Source of the DNA: Setoptus koraiensis
Lineage: Eukaryota; Animalia; Arthropoda
NCBI GenBank assembly: GCA_048013815.1
Contig: CM106585.1
Coordinates: forward strand, 1,674,001 to 1,738,000
Reading direction: 5' to 3'
DNA length: 64,000 bases
Part shown: positions 382 to 47,755 of the stretch, piece by piece
Numbering within the stretch: the stretch's first letter is position 1
Layout: every line of letters begins with the position of its first letter
Made by a program: the position numbers and the translations under genes
Notes under the pieces: model-generated
What the model was told of the DNA's origin: nothing
What the model saw: the letters and a program-made list of their open reading frames with translations, nothing else
Database searches by the model: none

Positions 382-699
382 ATGACCCAACCGAAGACTG
401 TGTCCCTAACTACTTCCGTCTTAGAAGCTTGTGCAGACCAGACAGTCTCCGTGATAACAGCCGACGGAAGAATACTAGTTGGATGCTTGAAAGGTTTTGA
501 CCATGCCACAAATGTCATATTAGATGATTGTCATGAGCGGGTCTACTCAATGGATCAGCCCGTGGAAAAACAGAGACTGGGTCTTTATATCATTCGAGGA
601 GAAAACATAGCTGTTATCAGTGAAATAGACACTAATATAGATAGAAACTTGGATCTAGAGAATTGTCGGGCGCCTCCTCTGAAACCCGTGAAGCATTGA
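382..699 (+). CDS. LSM8: U6 snRNA-associated Sm-like protein LSm8 (105 aa, intronless)
   Basis: Sm1/Sm2 motifs VSVITADGRILVGCLKGFDHATNVILDDCHERVY and LGLYIIRGENIAVISEID, plus C-terminal RAPPLKPVKH, align colinearly with metazoan LSm8. Confidence 0.95.
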   Translation: MTQPKTVSLTTSVLEACADQTVSVITADGRILVGCLKGFDHATNVILDDCHERVYSMDQPVEKQRLGLYIIRGENIAVISEIDTNIDRNLDLENCRAPPLKPVKH

Positions 700-1019: not shown

Positions 1020-1175
1020 TCAAAAATCTGCATCAAGAGTAAATTTCATATCATCCGATGTGTTGGTCATAACGGCATTACTATTCTGATATGAGACTTT
1101 GGCGTCGTGCATGATTTTATCCTTGCTCTCAGAGGCATCGTCCAAGAAATCGAATGGATTTTCTTTATTGTAAAA
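1020..1175 (-). CDS. RRM2: RNR small-subunit homologue, exon 2 (FYNKENPFDF...KFTLDADF*)
   Basis: Acceptor cacag|TTT at 1175, phase 0. The 52 codons end in the canonical R1-binding heptapeptide FTLDADF and TGA (1022-1020). Not in the ORF track. Confidence 0.93.
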   Translation of the reverse strand, partial: FYNKENPFDFLDDASESKDKIMHDAKVSYQNSNAVMTNTSDDMKFTLDADF

Positions 1176-1284
1176 CTGTGAAATTGAATATAAATAGAAA
1201 GGATATTAGTTGAGGACTGACACACATTGCATCAATTATTTGTTTGGAAGAAATCATTAAAAGTTTCATAGTCTATTAGCTTAC

Positions 1285-2157
1285 CTTTGAGTAGCCGAGA
1301 TCAACGAGCAGACGATCGGCAGCAAATTCTATATATTGTCTCATGAGGACACAATTGATACCAATGATGCTTACTGGCAATGTTTTAGTCATGAACATAG
1401 AGGCCATACTGGTTATTTCTTGTACAATTTCATGTGCTCTATCCTCGCTAAGTTCGTCCTCCACATATTTATAGAGCAAACAAGAGAAACTACAATTCAA
1501 TTGCTCATCCCTACTAATGAGATCGTTGCTTGAGTATAGCCCTGGCATTAAGCCTTCACGCTTAACCTTGAGCCAACCAATAGTGGCAAATGGGCCAGCT
1601 AATAGAATCCCTTGGAGGCACGCGAAGGACAGCAGTCTTTCGGCAAATGTTTTGCTTTCCATAGTTGTAGATTTAATCGCCCATTTTAAGATATCCCTCA
1701 TGTTTGGCATGTTTAAAGTGTCAACAATAAGCTGATCCCTCTTTTGGACATTGTCCCCAAGTAGCTCGTCTATGACCATAGAGTACATCACTCTGTGTGT
1801 CTTTTTAACGTCTGCTTGCGATCCAAAGAAGTATGTGGCCTCTTTGATTTCAGTTTTGTTTATAAATTTCATAAATAATTCCTTGTTGATGACGGTCTGA
1901 TGATAAGTAAATAGAAAGCCCAGCAATTTCAATAGGAACTCTCTCTCATCTACAGTAAATTTACTTCCAAAATCCACGCTGTCCTTGGAAAGGTATACAT
2001 CATTAACTGTCCAAAATGAATCCAATGTTGCCTGATACATCAACCAAATATCCTCATATTCCACTGGCAATGTGACGTATTTTGAGGGGTCTGCAGACAG
2101 TAGCATGGATTCATCATTGACATGTGTCGGTTGTTCAGTCACTTTATCCGAAGCCAT
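1285..2157 (-). CDS. RRM2: RNR small-subunit (R2) homologue, exon 1; divergent, iron ligands substituted; spliced protein 342 aa
   Basis: R2 motifs PVEYEDIW, SFWT, LSKD, GLMPGL, SNDLISRDE, QYIEFAADRLL. Donor AAG|GTAAGC at 1285/1284; 109-nt intron. Confidence 0.92.
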
Positions 2158-15602: not shown

Positions 15603-17657
15603 TTAACGTTTCATTTCCACCCTGGGCTTTGCGTGCTGCGTCTTGTCGGCTTCTTGTCGGCCGTCTTGCTTGTGCGGATGTTGCTGCTGCTGCTGCTGAT
15701 TGGTTTTGAAAAAAGTGGCGGCCATAATCTGTGCGAGCTGCTTCAATTTAAAACTGGACAATTTACCATCATTGGCGCTGTGCCGCTCATTAGCGTTGGC
15801 GTGCCGGGCGCCACTTGAGCCGGGCCACTCGTAGCCGGTGCCTTCCAGCAATTGGCCTAGATCATCTTTGACATTCATGAGATGCTTAAATGATTCTAAT
15901 AATTGCGCGCCATTTATATAGGGGCTTATGTTTGCGAACAGATTCTCCATGAGCAACAAATCGCTACCGCTGGTTTGCTGGCCAGCGGTTTGCTCTTGCT
16001 GGCCGGCGGCCACTGAGCGTCGTCTACGGCGTCGCCGGCCCGTCACCGTTGTCGAGGTGGGATTTGTCAAAAAATTGAGACCCTGTCCGTTTTGGTTGTT
16101 AAACAGCATCAAGAACAACAAAAAGAACGGGCTACCTAACACCAGAATGCCCAGTATGACGGCCAGCGCAACGCAAGCAATTTCGCCAATTGTGATACCG
16201 TGATCCCATTTTGACAATTCCTCTTTGTGATGATGATTGTGCTCGTGGCTGTTGTCCGCCTGCATCAGCTGATGGTGATGTATGGCGGCGGCGTCTAGCG
16301 GCGAGCCAAGCCCAGCAGAGTGATAATTGTATTGCGATTGGGGCGCCAGGTCGCTGCTGACGTAACTGGGCAGGGCGGCCATGCTATGATATGAACTGGT
16401 GTGTGCACTGTTTGACAGAGCGGGCGAATCAAGGTAATTGTATTGTTTGTTTGACGACGATACTCGCTGGTGCTGGTGCTGCTGATGATTGTGATGATGA
16501 TTGTGATTGGCGTGATTGAGTAATTGATTGCCGACGCCGCTAGTGGCCGAAGTGACAGGCTGATAATTAGTGGCGATATAGTGGCCAGCGTCAATTGGCG
16601 CCGATGATTGATGGTTGTTGGCGGCCGCCGCCGGCTGATAACTGTAATGGTCTACGCTAGATGGCTGGCTGGGCCCGTAATAATGCTCGTTCGCATAGTC
16701 CAAACTGGAGTCCACAAGCGCCGAATCGGGCGTCTCCAGCGCCAACAGGTGAGCGTCTGACAGCAGCGTCTGTTGCGCTGCCGCCGAGCCAACAGGTGAC
16801 TTTGGCCGGGCCGACAAATCGCGTCGACTGGTGGCCGCTTGCAACTGCTTAGGGGCCACAAGAGAGGAATATTTCGATGTGAGCGAACCAGATAAAGCAG
16901 CGTTCGAGTTGTAGCTGGTGGGATATTGGCGCGCCAAGCGGGCCTCGGCCAATGCCGAGTTGCTGTTGGCCATTGAGGCGTAACTGTAACTGGGCACCTG
17001 AGCGTGCTGCTCGCCACTATAAGTTGACTTTAGCGAGCTAGACATTTGCTGGTATTTGTCGTGATTATATTTGTCGGACAACGACGACAGTGAACCTGAG
17101 CTTGTTGCGCCAGTGTTAATGGCGGTCGAGTTAATTGTTGTGACGCTGCTCATTGTGACGCTGGGTGTTGTGGCCTGTGTTGTTGGCGACTCGTTAGAGT
17201 AAAATAAGTCGTTGGCGATGGGCGCCGAATAGTATTGCGTGTCCGTTGGGCTGACGTAATTGATTGGCGCTGCAGTTGATTTGTTGTTTGCAGCAGCATC
17301 GCCAACGTTGCTGCTGCTGCCGGCCGGATTGTCGTCGCTGGCTTGATTGTCGCGCTTAGTGAGCTGCATCTGAGCTGATTGCTGCTGCTGCTGCTGCATT
17401 CTCACCTGGTTCTGTAGCGCCTCAATGGCCGACGTGAGATCGTGCACACTGGACGAGTGGCGCAACGCATCGGACTCGTAATCGGCCAGGCAACTCGTCA
17501 GCGAGCTTGCAATCAATATCCAGCTCAAAATGACGGCCAAGCGTCTCCAGATGGTTGTCGCATTGTTGTTGCTGTTGCTGTTGCTGTTGATGGGCTTGTT
17601 GGCCACTGGCTGCTTGTCGCCAATTGTGGCGCGATCTCTCGATTTGCACCCGTTCAT
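15603..17657 (-). CDS. Nested single-exon 684-aa predicted membrane/secretory-pathway protein of unknown family
   Basis: Long non-repeat ORF with an N-terminal hydrophobic signal-like segment (LAVILSWILIASSLTSCLA), S/Y/H/Q-rich middle, hydrophobic TM segment (IACVALAVILGILVLGSPFFLLFLMLF) and polybasic [14 protein letters not shown] on the minus strand at about 15025-15030. Confidence 0.85.
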   Translation of the reverse strand: MNGCKSRDRATIGDKQPVANKPINSNSNSNNNATTIWRRLAVILSWILIASSLTSCLADYESDALRHSSSVHDLTSAIEALQNQVRMQQQQQQSAQMQLTKRDNQASDDNPAGSSSNVGDAAANNKSTAAPINYVSPTDTQYYSAPIANDLFYSNESPTTQATTPSVTMSSVTTINSTAINTGATSSGSLSSLSDKYNHDKYQQMSSSLKSTYSGEQHAQVPSYSYASMANSNSALAEARLARQYPTSYNSNAALSGSLTSKYSSLVAPKQLQAATSRRDLSARPKSPVGSAAAQQTLLSDAHLLALETPDSALVDSSLDYANEHYYGPSQPSSVDHYSYQPAAAANNHQSSAPIDAGHYIATNYQPVTSATSGVGNQLLNHANHNHHHNHQQHQHQRVSSSNKQYNYLDSPALSNSAHTSSYHSMAALPSYVSSDLAPQSQYNYHSAGLGSPLDAAAIHHHQLMQADNSHEHNHHHKEELSKWDHGITIGEIACVALAVILGILVLGSPFFLLFLMLFNNQNGQGLNFLTNPTSTTVTGRRRRRRRSVAAGQQEQTAGQQTSGSDLLLMENLFANISPYINGAQLLESFKHLMNVKDDLGQLLEGTGYEWPGSSGARHANANERHSANDGKLSSFKLKQLAQIMAATFFKTNQQQQQQHPHKQDGRQEADKTQHAKPRVEMKR

Positions 17658-41000: not shown

Positions 41001-41508
41001 AGTCGTAAGCTTAATTATCGTTTGCTTGACAATAATCATCATATATCAAGCTTATCAGTGAGTCAGCGATAGCCTGCTGATTGTGATGACAATTTTCACT
41101 TGGCGCCAATCACTAGACGGTGAGCGCTCAAAAGTTTTGCAAACAAACAAACAACTTGATCTATTGTTGATGGTAATCTTTATGACTGGCCGTACTGCCT
41201 GAATGTAAAAATTCATCCTATCAATAAAGATGACGATGTTCGAGATTGAGATAATGAACAACAACAAACAACTATCACCAGTTGCTTGCCACCCAGCGAC
41301 CGGCCAAGATATTTGCAACTAGGCCGCAGATTGTTTTCGTTTCTGTTTCTCTCTTTTGGCTTTCTATCCGAAATATTCTCTGTACATTCGCTGTGTTTTT
41401 GTTTCTCTCTAATTTGCGTCGACTTTACAAAACTCACAAAAGAATCGAGAGTCCAACAAAGAGAGAATATGAAGAGAAGAAGAAGAAGATATTCAGTGGT
41501 TCACTTAC

Positions 41509-42059
41509 CTAACATCTTGCTTAGATCGGCATTATGCAAATCTGGATTGGCATCTGCCAGCCTCTTTCGTTCCGCTTTGGCCCAGACCATAAACGCATTC
41601 ATTGGCCGCCTAATTCTTGAAGCGGCCGCTATGGCAGCCGTCGACTGAGCCACCGGAACATGATGATGATGATGATGGTGATGATGGAGTGGGTGTGGAA
41701 GTGGATGCTGATGCGGGCCAAGATGGTGCCCATGATGAGGAGCCATAGGATGATGATGAGCATGTTGGGCATGATGAGCATGATGGGCATGGTGAGGATT
41801 ATGATGATGGGACAGGTGAGGCGGCAACAGATGATGCGGCCCAGAATGATGTGCGGCCAACGAAAACGGCAAATGCGGATGTGGTTGTTGTTGTTGTTGT
41901 TGTTGGTTCGGATTTTGCGTCGGTGACTGCTGCTGGACATGTTGATTGTGCTGATTGGGTGCCGCCATCGAGGTCGCTTGATGATGAACTAGCTGTTGTT
42001 GTTGTTGCTGATTAGGGTTACTATTGCCAAATTGTTGCATCACAGGTATTTGCTGATGC

Positions 42060-42090
<31 letters not shown>

Positions 42091-43096
42091 GCTGTTGTTG
42101 TTGTTGCTGTTGTTGTTGTTGATGCTGCTGTTGAGCTTGGAACGATGATAATTGTTGCATTTGCATCTGCTGTTGAATTTGACGTTGCTGTTGCATGTCC
42201 GATTGTGACATTGCGTCACTTCCGATAGTTGGTGTTTCATCGGTGCCATTCAATTGTTGCTGTTGTTGTTGTTGCTGCTGTTGGGGTGCCTGAAGATGAT
42301 GAATTATGGGAGCCGGCGATAGTTCGGCCTGTTGTGATGCGCCGCATTCATACTGTTGCTGTTGGTACTGATTCATCAGCTGATCCTGGTGTTGCTGGTG
42401 CTGTTGATGTTGTTGGTGCTGATTTAAAGTAGGTGAATATTGCACTTGTTGTTCTGTTGCTTGCGGGCTAGACTGTTTGACTTCATTCGCTTGATTATTA
42501 TTATTATTATTATTGATTAGGGTAACTTGTTGCCAAATTGATTGCTGTTGTTGTTGCTCTATTAATGACTCCTTTTTCACTTGTGACCCTTGAGCCATTT
42601 TACCATTGTCAACTATTGCGTTGCCATTGATCAATGGCGATGATGATGTCGACGATGGTGACTCTTGAGTGCTTGATTGATTAGCATTAATTAGTTGATT
42701 ATCGCTATTGTTGTTTATGTTGTTGCTAATCATATTATTATTGTTGTTGTTATTTTGCTGTTGCTGTGGTTGCTGTTGTGGTTGCTGTTGTTGTTGTTGT
42801 TGCTGTTGTTGTTGCTGTTGTTGTTGCTGTTGTTGTGGCGCCGTTATGGACAATGCATGATCACCAATTGATGCTGTTGGCGATGCCGAACTATTCATAT
42901 CTATTTGTGACTGGCGTTGTTGTTCCTTTGTTACAATTGTTGATTTAGATTGCTCAACAACGAAATATTCCTTTGAAGATTGCGTTGGCGCCTGATGGTC
43001 AACAGTTGTTGTCTCGAGAGCTAGGCTATTTTCAAAAGTGACCAGATTGAAGGATAACGATGATGGCGACGAGGACAACGACAACGACGACGGCGG

Positions 43097-43132
<36 letters not shown>

Positions 43133-43384
43133 AGAAGCTGCAGAAGCAGAGGGAGACAACGACGATAATAATTGTCGTGATTTATTATATTGTAAGTGAC
43201 AATGAGATGAAGATGACACAGATAATGATGACAAGCCCGATGACGAGGATGGCGACGACGACGGCGACGGCAATGATGTAATCGGTGACGAAGATATAGG
43301 TTGCTGGTGACAATTATGCAAAAGTGATATGATGCCGTTGCTAGTTGATTGGCTTGTTGTAGCCAATGGTATTGACATGGTCAT
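41509..43384 (-). CDS. SoxF: SoxF exon 1 (S/Q/H-rich N-terminus plus first part of HMG box); spliced CDS 4116 nt, 1371 aa
   Basis: [37 protein letters not shown] is the SoxF (Sox7/17/18, Drosophila Sox15) type of HMG start. Donor G|GTAAGT. Exon lengths 1876+87+2153 sum to a multiple of 3. Confidence 0.93.
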
Positions 43385-45484: not shown

Positions 45485-47755
45485 CTATAGAATGATATCG
45501 GAAAATATTGTCTTAACACTATCTTGTTGTTTGTTGGCACCATTGTCGTCCGTTTCTAACATTTCTATGGCATGTCGTCTAACATTCATCTTGTTCATAT
45601 CTTCTCGCATACTCAAAAGTGCGGCCAAATGATCCACGCTTATGTCCGGATATCGATGCTTCAATCCTTGCACTTCCAATGAGAGTAAACTTGAATCCTT
45701 CAGTCTAAGGAATTCAGCCAACGCCTTCAGAGCATCAAAGGGAGAATTCGCGTCAGAATTAGGGTCTAATTTGACCAAGGCATTCTTGAGAACGTCACCC
45801 TCGCGTATAAATCTATCACAAAGTTGTTCGCGTTGACTATAATCCCTAAGGGCCATCTTCTTTTGTAATATGGCTTTCATGTACCCTTTTGCTAGGGAGT
45901 TTTGCAATTTCTTACTCGCAAATATCTTTCTATTTTCCTGTTTTAAGTGACGATAATCTTGGAAATAGTCATCTAGTGTCAGGCAGATATTTTCTACACA
46001 ACTCACTTTACCTTCTAGCCATTCTTTTGTACCAATCTGACTGATCTCTTTATCTAAATCGAGGAATATTTCATGTATTAGATAATCCAAAGAATCATCG
46101 CGCAATTTTTCGAATGAGCTCAGAGCTAATTCGAACGCCTTGTCTGCCTCATTTTCGACATCAAGTTCTTGCATTGTAGTATTTGCTGTGGTTGATAGCT
46201 TGTAGTGCTGTCTAAATTCTTTTTCCATGTCCACGAAACTAGAGCAATTGTTTGTTATCGCTACCATGTAAGGGGTAAAAAATTTAATTTGACGTCTTTC
46301 ACTAAAATGTTTCCTAGCGTACTTATCAATTGTTTCTTTGTATTGTTGCGCGAATATGGCCATTCGATTCATACTTAAAGTTAGAACACGATTTACGAGG
46401 CTTTGGTTTACAGATTTTGCAACCTGTAAGTGTTGGTCGATCATCTTGAAAATAAATACTGGTGTTGCTGTCTGATAATGTCCAGAATGATCTTTTTCTG
46501 GTGGATCGGTTTGACTAGTCCAGTCTTTCATTTCCCTATTGATAGTATTGCTCATCCATTCTTTATAATTCTTCTCTATAGTTGATAGGTATTTTTCTGT
46601 CAATTCCTGCTTTTTGGCATCCGTCAATAATTGGTCCAAGCCTTCCTCTTTGGGATTGAAGTTGAGATCGGGATGACCCAAAAGCTTTGGACCAGTGTAT
46701 TGTTCAACCCAATTGATCAAGCAAACGTATTCGTTACCTACCAGATGAGTGGCTAGATCCAACAAATGAGTACGAAGGCTTTTATGATACATATGCAACA
46801 ATTCATTTAATATATTGAATGAAGGTGGGAAGCATTGTACTCCAGTCAATTTGAAGAGGCGCAAATCTTCCAAAATCATGATACGAGTGTCCTCTAGATG
46901 TTTAGCTAGCCATTGTGAGTTCTCGTCTTTCTTTTCGAATTGATTACCCATAATCCTATCCGATATAGTCTCCTCCAATATATCAAATAGTCTCTTTCTC
47001 CATTGCTTTGGTCTTCCTTGTGGCATGAAACCAGTGGCCTCGAAGCGTTTTATGGCCAAGGCGTCAGCTTTCTCCTCTCGCTCTATGATTCTCAAAGCAT
47101 TAACGATTGATGTTGGTTTAGTAACTATAGAACTCAATGTCAGCTGGACAATAATCCCTATTTGTTTACTCAATTCTTCATTCAATCTGTCCACGTCCGA
47201 AAAGTATTGTTTCAGTGTGAGTCTGTCATTTGGATTGCTAGATGGATGTCTATGCAGTTCGAATAGTAAAGCACATCGAGAATTTTCCAATTCGGTCAGA
47301 TGCTGATGAGCTAATAATAATTTTCCATTGGCAATATGCTCGCTTGTAATTGCAACGTTGACGGGCACGTCGAATATATGTTTGAAATTTTCTTTTGCTG
47401 TACACAATTGACTATAACATAGACTTTCGTCCCTGATACTTTTCAATTTCGTCAATAGGTTTGGTATCTCTGAGAATTGATTTTCTACTTCTATTAAACT
47501 CTCTTTAACATCCTTGATATCACCTATTGCCTTCTCCAAATTGGCCAATCCGTTCCGGACACTATTCAGATGTTCCGAATAGCTCTTGCGTAATTTACTC
47601 GTTGATGTGGTCATCTTATCCCTTAGGTTGTTCTCATTACCCTGACTTATGGCCTTGTTAACTTTAAGCCGGATCATGGTCTCTTGTTCTGCTTGTGGGT
47701 CCATGGCTGATATTCTTTTCGTCACAATATCCGGAATTGTTGAAAAATCATCCAA
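45485..47755 (-). CDS. EXOC3: Exocyst complex component 3 (Sec6); start codon uncertain
   Basis: Colinear with Sec6: LCTAKENFKHIFDVP, LLLAHQHLTELENSR, ALRIIEREEKAD, GFMPQGRPKQW, FPPSFNI, LTLDDYFQDY, YPDISVDHLAALLSMREDM. The track start at 47755 is TTG; the first in-frame ATG is at 47704. Confidence 0.93.
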   Translation of the reverse strand: MDDFSTIPDIVTKRISAMDPQAEQETMIRLKVNKAISQGNENNLRDKMTTSTSKLRKSYSEHLNSVRNGLANLEKAIGDIKDVKESLIEVENQFSEIPNLLTKLKSIRDESLCYSQLCTAKENFKHIFDVPVNVAITSEHIANGKLLLAHQHLTELENSRCALLFELHRHPSSNPNDRLTLKQYFSDVDRLNEELSKQIGIIVQLTLSSIVTKPTSIVNALRIIEREEKADALAIKRFEATGFMPQGRPKQWRKRLFDILEETISDRIMGNQFEKKDENSQWLAKHLEDTRIMILEDLRLFKLTGVQCFPPSFNILNELLHMYHKSLRTHLLDLATHLVGNEYVCLINWVEQYTGPKLLGHPDLNFNPKEEGLDQLLTDAKKQELTEKYLSTIEKNYKEWMSNTINREMKDWTSQTDPPEKDHSGHYQTATPVFIFKMIDQHLQVAKSVNQSLVNRVLTLSMNRMAIFAQQYKETIDKYARKHFSERRQIKFFTPYMVAITNNCSSFVDMEKEFRQHYKLSTTANTTMQELDVENEADKAFELALSSFEKLRDDSLDYLIHEIFLDLDKEISQIGTKEWLEGKVSCVENICLTLDDYFQDYRHLKQENRKIFASKKLQNSLAKGYMKAILQKKMALRDYSQREQLCDRFIREGDVLKNALVKLDPNSDANSPFDALKALAEFLRLKDSSLLSLEVQGLKHRYPDISVDHLAALLSMREDMNKMNVRRHAIEMLETDDNGANKQQDSVKTIFSDIIL

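What the first reader, a model, noticed from the sequence alone, without database searches (positions are those of the whole stretch)
1020..2157. Rnr4-like, probably metal-deficient ribonucleotide reductase small subunit in an animal
Seen: against human RRM2, the six di-iron ligands D138/E169/H172/E232/E266/H269 read H86/K118/H121/Q182/E218/N221, so 4 of 6 are replaced (FAASDG to FTYHQ, MENIH to VKKTH, VEG to LQG, DEGLH to DEQLN). The radical Tyr (Y125), the SFW Trp, the C-terminal YQ Tyr and an intact FTLDADF R1-docking tail are kept, with an open frame and a normal intron. Known: S. cerevisiae Rnr4 lacks several iron ligands and works as the heterodimer partner of Rnr2; bacterial class Ie R2 is metal-free but has a different substitution pattern. 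Inference: a purifying-selected pseudoenzyme acting as scaffold or dominant-negative R1 regulator. I know of no described animal equivalent.
Basis: partly seen in the sequence, partly recalled or inferred. Interest (0 to 1): 0.8.

Follow-up and report, generated by a model that had tools for sequence, protein, structure and literature searches.

The report
Iron-site-deficient RNR small subunit in gall mites
This mite gene encodes a well-conserved copy of the ribonucleotide reductase small subunit that has lost four of its six iron-binding residues; the same altered site occurs in about 30 related gall- and rust-mite species, so it looks like an animal counterpart, evolved independently, of yeast's iron-free helper subunit Rnr4.

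Summary
A two-exon minus-strand gene (2157-1285, 1175-1020; 109-nt GT-AG intron) encodes a 342-aa eukaryotic R2. Four of its six di-iron ligands are replaced: D to Q87, E to K118, E to Q182, H to N221. H121, E218, the radical Tyr125, Trp49, Asp217 and the FTLDADF tail are kept.

It is not a one-off or an assembly error. 29 unnamed Logan/metagenome proteins plus one more (P0359) from an exhaustive search, 44-90% identical where measured (P0359 41%), share an invariant H86/K118/K119/H121/Y125/Q182/E218/N221 signature.

They form one clade (100/100 support) nested among acariform-mite canonical R2s, behind a very long stem. The host is a mite of the eriophyoid lineage.

dN/dS against a 91%-identical relative is 0.06-0.10. 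The intron position and an LSm-gene neighbour are conserved. The AF2 model is confident (pLDDT 90).

One eriophyoid sample set holds both this paralogue and a canonical, fully liganded R2. The C-terminal pathway Tyr survives in only about half of the eriophyoid members.

Best reading: an iron-free beta-prime pseudo-subunit that still docks R1 and probably pairs with canonical R2, like Rnr4 but of separate origin. A canonical R2 in this genome, expression and metal content were not tested. No paper describing it was found.

The parts
1285..2157 (-). Exon 1 of the R2-like gene (residues 1-291): the whole ferritin-like core with the altered metal site
   Evidence: ORF and splice donor GGCTACTCAAAG|GTAAGC. 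PF00268 at E 6e-60. AF2 pLDDT 90.2 and TM 0.85 to human RRM2.
1176..1284 (-). 109-nt GT..AG intron
   Evidence: Splicing restores the frame into the conserved ENPFDF...FTLDADF tail. A relative (L001) has an intron at the same position, while only 55 of 109 aligned intron columns are identical. No RNA read confirms the splice; contig X12 spans it unspliced.
1020..1175 (-). Exon 2 (residues 292-342 plus stop): C-terminal tail with Tyr320 ('SYQ') and the R1-docking heptapeptide FTLDADF (1023-1043)
   Evidence: The terminal F and the acidic motif are kept in 27 of 30 clade members.
1897..1902 (-). Codons H86-Q87. Q87 takes the place of the Asp ligand (variable in the clade: Y/H/Q/C/S/A). H86 replaces Ser and is invariant in the clade.
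1795..1806 (-). Codons K118-K119-T120-H121. The bridging Glu is replaced by an invariant Lys, the neighbouring Asn by an invariant Lys, and the His ligand is kept.
1783..1785 (-). Codon Tyr125, the position of the tyrosyl radical; invariant in 30 of 30
1612..1614 (-). Codon Q182, replacing a Glu ligand; invariant in the clade
1495..1509 (-). Codons D217-E218-Q-L-N221. Asp and the Glu ligand are kept, and the second His ligand is replaced by an invariant Asn.
382..699 (+). Intronless LSm-domain gene lying tail-to-tail with the R2-like gene; a conserved neighbour
   Evidence: PF01423 at E 1e-19. The same arrangement, with an orthologous LSm protein (55-61% identical), is seen beside the R2-like gene of two eriophyoids, L007 and L096.

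Best explanation
The gene encodes a beta-prime type pseudo-subunit of class Ia ribonucleotide reductase. It is an R2 paralogue that arose by duplication of the canonical R2 in the acariform-mite lineage leading to the eriophyoid mites. It went through a burst of change that removed the di-iron site, and it has been conserved since.

Shown here:
- The R2 fold is intact.
- Four of six ligands are replaced by residues that are themselves invariant.
- The R1-docking C-terminus is retained.
- Selection is strongly purifying.
- A canonical R2 is present in the same eriophyoid sample set.

Inferred:
- The invariant Lys118 ammonium fills the former metal site and pairs with the retained Glu218, so the protein folds stably without iron.
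- The protein cannot make its own di-iron tyrosyl radical.
- It stays part of the RNR machinery. The most likely form is a heterodimer with the canonical R2, as yeast Rnr4 pairs with Rnr2. A homodimer that occupies R1's tail-binding site is the alternative.
- Either way it stabilises or tunes RNR rather than catalysing radical initiation itself.
For: Fold and family.

Ligand loss with clade-wide invariant replacements (H86, K118, K119, Q182, N221).

Monophyly: support is 100/100, the clade is nested in the acariform canonical R2s (99/93), and the stem is very long.

Narrow range: an exhaustive profile search of 1.84 billion representatives finds only two representative clusters above the canonical background, with E-values falling from 1e-115 to 1e-67.

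Selection: dN/dS is 0.06-0.10 at dS 0.5-0.75, and the intron position is conserved.

R1-docking motif F-x-x-D-x-D-F is retained.

The C-terminal pathway Tyr is present in only 13 of 26 full-length eriophyoid members. This is expected for a subunit that does not deliver a radical.

Coexistence with canonical R2: the R2-like P0018 and the eriophyoid Sec6 P0121 share assembly ERZ761561 at 601x and 642x coverage, and run SRR4142433. The same Sec6 and a fully liganded R2 share JGI metagenome 3300003845.
Against: No canonical R2 was shown in this window's own genome. The tools give no genome-wide search, and the window holds only this copy.

Coexistence in the eriophyoid rests on shared samples and similar coverage, not on one contig.

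There is no expression evidence for this species. Two RNA runs held no reads of the organism at all, and the only contig across the intron is unspliced.

Neither heterodimer formation nor absence of metal was tested.

The strict invariance of Tyr125, Trp49, His121 and Asp217 (the short-range radical-transfer network) is more than a mere scaffold obviously needs.
Confidence: 0.55

Rival explanations
1. Negative regulator. The protein forms homodimers that occupy the R2-tail binding site of R1 without delivering a radical, and so damps dNTP synthesis as a built-in competitive inhibitor.
For: The R1-docking heptapeptide is identical to the mammalian FTLDADF in this species and conserved in type across the clade. 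The iron site is lost. The pathway Tyr is dispensable in half of the members.
Against: Nothing separates it from the heterodimer model. The many clade-specific invariant changes in the N-terminal arm and core (D23, Y27, Q42, L45, K92) suggest a specific new interface rather than plain competition. Constitutive inhibitors of an essential enzyme are rarely this conserved.
Confidence: 0.2
2. Autonomous radical subunit with a new cofactor. A metal-free or single-metal site built from K118, H86, H121, E218, Q182 and N221 supports a Tyr125-derived radical, in the manner of bacterial class Ie.
For: Tyr125, Trp49, His121 and Asp217 are invariant in 30 of 30, and the replacing residues are fixed rather than random. 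A Lys in the metal site is also the hallmark of class Ie, where its ammonium sits at metal site 1 (PMC6176560).
Against: The substitution pattern differs from class Ie. There the Asp and both His are kept and the Asp is essential. Here the Asp column is variable and the second His is lost. No NrdI-type activase is known in animals, and none was looked for genome-wide. The C-terminal pathway Tyr is missing in about half of the eriophyoid members. A canonical R2 coexists in one eriophyoid.
Confidence: 0.1
3. Repurposed ferritin-like protein working outside RNR, for example as a ligand-binding or structural protein.
For: The stem branch is very long and many invariant clade-specific residues are new. 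R2 homologues such as R2lox have left RNR before (PMC3824934).
Against: Retention of the extreme C-terminal R1-docking motif and of the ENPFD tail hinge over deep divergence is hard to explain outside RNR.
Confidence: 0.1
4. Decaying pseudogene or assembly artefact.
For: No transcript evidence in this species. No canonical AATAAA within 320 nt downstream of the stop.
Against: The frame is open and the splice conserved. dN/dS is 0.06-0.10. 53 columns are invariant across 27 members of 44-55% identity. Independent runs reproduce the sequence.
Confidence: 0.02

Closest known systems
Saccharomyces cerevisiae Rnr4 (Y4, beta-prime)
   Same: Both are eukaryotic class Ia R2 paralogues that lack residues needed for the di-iron centre. 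Both coexist with a canonical R2 and keep the R2 fold (1sms/1jk0_B match the model at TM 0.76-0.83). According to PMC3824934, Rnr4 cannot build the cofactor and acts as partner or chaperone of Rnr2.
   Different: The origin is independent. The mite clade nests among acariform canonical R2s, not with fungal Rnr4, and identity to Rnr4 is only 27-29%. The replacement set (x, K, Q, N plus an invariant neighbouring His and second Lys) is its own. Rnr4's exact substitutions were not aligned here because the papers are not held. Heterodimer formation is not shown for the mite protein.
Bacterial class Ie NrdF (metal-free, DOPA radical, NrdI-activated)
   Same: Both are R2 proteins lacking several carboxylate ligands, with a conserved Lys placed in the former metal site and the radical-position Tyr retained (PMC6176560).
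   Different: Class Ie keeps the Asp and both His, loses three Glu, and has its Lys at the last Glu. Here the Asp and the second His are lost, one Glu is kept, and the Lys sits at the first (bridging) Glu. Class Ie needs an adjacent NrdI; no such partner is known here. Identity to class Ie structures is only 14-15%.
Canonical animal R2 (RRM2 / p53R2) and the eriophyoid canonical R2 (P0070, L011 ORF)
   Same: Same fold and about 40% identity. The same Trp, His, Asp and Tyr network is present, together with the same C-terminal FTLDADF-type tail.
   Different: Four of six ligands are gone. The N-terminus is short. There is a 2-residue insertion after Trp195. About 25 positions that are invariant in canonical R2 have switched to other invariant residues.
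Apicomplexan R2_e2 clade
   Same: Both are lineage-restricted, non-canonical eukaryotic R2 clades (PMC3824934).
   Different: According to that paper R2_e2 keeps the iron-coordinating residues and lies outside the main eukaryotic R2 clade. The mite clade lies inside it and has lost the ligands.

Membership tests
Ribonucleotide reductase small chain (PF00268, ferritin-like R2 fold) | Significant match to the family profile and the R2 fold | tested here: met
   Pfam E 6e-60 against a 33.6-bit cut-off. PDB phmmer E 3e-68. AF2 model TM 0.85 to human RRM2.
Functional class Ia R2 (di-iron tyrosyl radical subunit) | Six metal ligands D/E/H/E/E/H | tested here: not met
   Only H121 and E218 remain. 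The other four positions read Q87, K118, Q182 and N221.
Functional class Ia R2 (di-iron tyrosyl radical subunit) | Radical Tyr and the Trp/Asp/His transfer network | tested here: met
   Y125, W49, D217 and H121 are invariant in 30 of 30.
Functional class Ia R2 (di-iron tyrosyl radical subunit) | Conserved C-terminal pathway Tyr (the 'EYQ' motif) | tested here: inconclusive
   It is present as SYQ in this protein and its near relative. It is Tyr in only 13 of 26 full-length eriophyoid members, and His, Phe or other residues in the rest.
Functional class Ia R2 (di-iron tyrosyl radical subunit) | C-terminal R1-docking peptide | tested here: met
   FTLDADF here; F-x-x-D/E-x-D/E-F in 27 of 30. This is sequence evidence only; binding was not tested.
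Rnr4-type beta-prime subunit | R2 paralogue unable to bind the di-iron cofactor | tested here: met
   Inferred from ligand loss. Metal content was not measured.
Rnr4-type beta-prime subunit | Coexists with a canonical R2 in the same organism | tested here: inconclusive
   Met by sample linkage for one eriophyoid. Not testable for this genome with the tools. The window holds only the R2-like copy.
Rnr4-type beta-prime subunit | Forms the active heterodimer with canonical R2 | not testable with these tools
   No complex prediction or biochemistry was available.
Rnr4-type beta-prime subunit | Orthology with fungal Rnr4 | tested here: not met
   The clade nests within acariform-mite canonical R2s (99/93 support), apart from the fungal sequences. 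It works like Rnr4 at most; it is not a member of that lineage.
Class Ie metal-free R2 | Asp and both His kept, three Glu replaced, Lys at the last Glu | tested here: not met
   The pattern here is x/K/H/Q/E/N, against the description in PMC6176560.
Class Ie metal-free R2 | NrdI activase partner | not tested
   None of the ten window ORFs scanned against Pfam matched a flavodoxin-like family. The genome could not be searched.

The most novel reading that the evidence does not exclude
The eriophyoid-lineage R2-like protein is not inert. It is a radical-bearing subunit with a metal-free or otherwise unprecedented cofactor site (Lys118/His86/His121/Glu218 around the invariant Tyr125). That would be the first metal-independent class I RNR chemistry in a eukaryote.
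Probability: 0.08. Interest if true: 0.92.

Novelty: new variant of a known kind. Interest (0 to 1): 0.66.

Why it matters
Iron-free partner subunits of RNR are known from budding yeast. Animals are thought to use only fully liganded R2 (RRM2, p53R2).

A deeply conserved ligand-deficient R2 across a whole superfamily of plant-parasitic mites would be a second, independent invention of a beta-prime subunit. Its metal site is rebuilt in a different way, with a fixed Lys reminiscent of bacterial class Ie.

It gives a natural experiment on three questions:
- What an R2 fold needs in order to stay stable without metal.
- How RNR is regulated in some of the smallest, most streamlined animal genomes.
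- Whether iron economy shapes dNTP synthesis.

Eriophyoid mites are crop pests and virus vectors, so a lineage-specific RNR component is also a possible selective target. The family has no named or annotated entry (NCBI, UniProt) among the proteins the searches returned, so ordinary annotation pipelines would label it simply as 'RRM2'.

Tried and rejected
RNA evidence. Read laying on 300-2700 with two raw RNA runs carrying the same species label gave no reads, not even on the LSm housekeeping gene. The organism is therefore absent from those runs, and the label is probably a host. Two 'RNA?' Logan contigs cover only parts of the locus, and one spans the intron unspliced. A second run search restricted to RNA found nothing better.

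Composition linkage. Tetranucleotide and GC comparison of the R2-like and canonical-R2 contigs was uninformative. The R2-like contig L002 is itself heterogeneous: 44-48% GC at the gene and 57-66% around it.

Metagenome scan. It did give L011, which allowed the link through metagenome 3300003845.

Contig listing. Trying to list all six contigs that carry the canonical R2 only collapsed them further.

P0002.

Earlier notes. The scan's notes on this genome hold nothing on RNR.

Literature. The primary Rnr4 papers are not held, so Rnr4's exact substitutions were not compared.

ESM Atlas. It gave only generic R2 clusters.

Rejected readings. Pseudogene, assembly error, and symbiont or viral origin are all rejected. 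The gene has a spliceosomal intron and animal neighbours, and it nests among mite R2s.

Full report
**Anatomy.** The finding lies on the minus strand.
- Exon 1 runs 2157-1285 and ends ...GGCTACTCAAAG|GTAAGC.
- A 109-nt intron (1284-1176) ends ...TTCACAG.
- Exon 2 runs 1175-1020 including the stop.
- The spliced product is 342 aa.
- Exon 1 alone matches Pfam PF00268 at E 6e-60 and human p53R2/RRM2 chains at E about 3e-68.
- An AlphaFold2 model built on a 40-sequence alignment has mean pLDDT 90.2. Only the first 26 residues are disordered. It superposes on human RRM2 at TM 0.85.
- tBLASTn finds no second R2 homologue in the window.

**The metal site.** The HMMER alignment to p53R2 reads as follows:
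- FAASDG aligns with FTYHQT.
- IENVH aligns with VKKTH.
- VEG aligns with LQG.
- DEGLH aligns with DEQLN.

So Asp becomes Q87, the first Glu becomes K118, the third ligand Glu becomes Q182 and the second His becomes N221. H121 and E218 remain. There is no gap between this motif and the conserved Asn four residues on, so the Asp column is Q87 and H86 replaces the preceding Ser.

In 134 canonical R2 sequences all six ligand columns are 100% conserved, so this is not ordinary variation. Tyr125, Trp49, Asp217, a tail 'SYQ' Tyr320 and the terminal FTLDADF are all present.

**Not an error, not a one-off.**
- Runs from five studies hold 68-100% of the sampled 31-mers of the locus.
- An independent 266-nt contig is identical over 1877-2142, which includes the H86/Q87 codons.
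- A search of 5.8 billion proteins returned 29 unnamed proteins (P0001-P0029), almost all from Logan assemblies, at 46-90% identity. Identity then steps down to canonical R2s at 38-45%.
- Every one of the 29 reads H / K / H / Y / Q / E / N at the positions of H86, K118, H121, Y125, Q182, E218 and N221. Only the Asp column varies: Y, H, Q, C, S or A.
- Within 27 members of 44-55% identity, 53 columns are invariant, including K118-K119-T120-H121.
- About 25 positions that are fixed in canonical R2 have switched to a different fixed residue. Examples are N to D23, F to Y27, K to Q42, E to L45, E to K92, C to Y109 and Y to F111.
- An exhaustive profile search of 1.84 billion cluster representatives found only two representatives above background, at E 6e-150 and 9e-115, with the next at 1e-67. 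The family is therefore narrow.
- One of the two, P0360, is a very long-branched member that still has the second His.

**Whose gene.** The neighbouring single-exon Sec6 gene (45485-47755) has acariform mites as its best named relatives, at 52-54% identity, against about 40% for ticks and insects.
- In a Sec6 tree the window is sister, with full support, to a 25-sequence clade that contains Aceria tosichella, an eriophyoid.
- The R2-like tree has the same shape: {window, P0001, P0002} against about 27 others.
- Sec6 P0121 from that clade and R2-like P0018 occur in the same ENA assembly at 642x and 601x coverage, and in the same SRA run. The larger subclade is therefore eriophyoid.
- The scan's notes say the genome lies on two pieces and mention gall-type features. 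Published eriophyoid genomes with two chromosomes exist: 47 Mb (PMC11920263) and 34.5 Mb (PMC11879100). The species itself was not identified.

**Origin.** In a careful ML tree the clade has 100/100 support. It sits inside a 99/93-supported group of acariform canonical R2s: Dinothrombium, astigmatid mites, and an eriophoid-type canonical pair formed by P0070 and the L011 ORF. The stem is very long. The exact sister group is unresolved, and long-branch effects are possible. The simplest reading is a duplication of the canonical gene in the ancestor of this lineage, followed by rapid remodelling and then constraint. It is not related to fungal Rnr4 by descent.

**Selection and gene structure.**
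- The locus of P0001 (L001) has the same intron position, with GT..AG ends. Its intron is poorly conserved: 55 of 109 aligned columns are identical.
- Its coding sequence is 87% identical at the DNA level and 91% at the protein level.
- dN/dS is 0.06 (NG86) to 0.10 (YN00), at dS 0.5-0.75.
- The eriophyoid members have no intron.
- An LSm-domain gene lies tail-to-tail with the R2-like gene in the window (382-699) and in two eriophyoids. The LSm proteins are 55-61% identical.

**Is there a normal R2 as well?** This is the crux, and it could not be tested on this genome. For one eriophyoid there is indirect evidence:
- The canonical, fully liganded 329-aa R2 of L011 is 81% identical to P0070, with FAASDG, IENIH, VEG and DEGLH intact.
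- It is encoded in JGI metagenome 3300003845, which also holds the exact Sec6 protein P0121.
- P0121 in turn shares assembly ERZ761561 and run SRR4142433 with R2-like P0018.
- Each of the three proteins is seen on five or six contigs.
- The canonical gene sits in a dense, intron-poor animal contig, next to BUD31 and a DDT/PHD gene. P0070 has the same neighbours.

This is sample-level linkage, not proof.

**The tail.**
- The last seven residues keep the F-x-x-acidic-x-acidic-F docking motif in 27 of 30 members. In the window protein they are identical to the vertebrate FTLDADF.
- The pathway Tyr of the canonical 'VGEYQ' motif is kept as SYQ here and in P0001.
- In the eriophyoid subclade the corresponding 'TYQS' Tyr is present in only 13 of 26 full-length members. 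It is His in about five, Phe in two and other residues in the rest.
- A subunit that had to pass a radical to R1 through its own tail would not tolerate this.

**Mechanism.**
- Shown: an intact R2 fold without a di-iron ligand set, fixed replacement residues, a retained R1-docking end, strong constraint, and probable coexistence with a canonical R2.
- Inferred: Lys118 occupies the vacated metal position and pairs with the retained Glu218. In class Ie, a Lys ammonium sits at metal site 1 (PMC6176560).
- Inferred: this gives a stable apo-like subunit that stays in the RNR system as partner of canonical R2, as Rnr4 partners Rnr2 (PMC3824934), or as an R1-occupying regulator.
- The class Ie analogy stops there. 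Class Ie keeps the Asp and both His and depends on NrdI.
- The invariance of Tyr125, Trp49, His121 and Asp217 remains incompletely explained. It keeps a small probability on a radical-bearing role.

**What is missing.**
- There is no transcript evidence for this species.
- In one eriophyoid, four assemblies from one run series all begin at the same base 61 nt upstream of the ATG. This would fit a transcript 5' end but is not proof.
- No canonical AATAAA lies within 320 nt downstream of the stop.
- Full-text searches found no paper linking RNR to eriophyoid mites, and the first eriophyoid genome paper does not mention RNR.

**Verdict.** It is a lineage-wide, independently evolved, iron-site-deficient R2 paralogue in an animal group. 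It most likely works like Rnr4 without being a member of that family.

Noticed in passing
P0360 (from; no window coordinates): A very long-branched member of the eriophyoid subclade reads H/H/K/H/Y/Q/E/H. It still has (or has regained) the second His ligand in a DEGIH motif, and it has lost several otherwise invariant residues. It may be a second paralogue, an intermediate state or a decaying copy.
   Followed up: partly
L002:9001-12000 (contig of P0018): The R2-like gene sits in a 44-48% GC island inside an eriophyoid contig that is otherwise 57-66% GC. This is strong compositional heterogeneity over a few kb in a streamlined genome.
   Followed up: no
window:3156-5192 (-), 15603-17657 (-), 41501-43384 (-): Three long single ORFs (627-684 aa) are very rich in Gln/His/Ser runs. 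The first two have no Pfam domain. The third ends in the first half of an HMG box (Sox-type), so it continues past an intron.
   Followed up: partly
window:43970-62469: A run of largely single-exon housekeeping genes: protein kinase, Sec6, aldehyde dehydrogenase, snurportin, an RPAP3-like TPR protein and a peroxisomal-type ABCD transporter. By contrast, 5-15 kb and 18-41 kb hold almost no long ORFs.
   Followed up: partly
window:24900-26700: A stretch with overlapping 150-206 aa ORFs on both strands, rich in Arg/Ala/Ser/Thr. It looks like a GC-rich or simple-sequence region rather than genes.
   Followed up: no
L010 and L094/L011 (canonical R2 loci): The eriophoid-type canonical R2 has a short N-terminus, without the long N-terminal region seen in the other mite canonical R2s aligned. 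It keeps the neighbours BUD31 and a DDT/PHD gene in two species. Its own branch is long for a canonical R2.
   Followed up: partly
runs X15-X31: Many RNA runs carry the same species label as DNA runs that hold this locus, yet they contain none of it. The two laid (X15, X18) had no reads even on the LSm gene, and eight Logan assemblies hold 0.00 of the sampled words. The label is probably that of a host plant or a mixed sample, so the mite DNA in those DNA runs is a passenger.
   Followed up: partly
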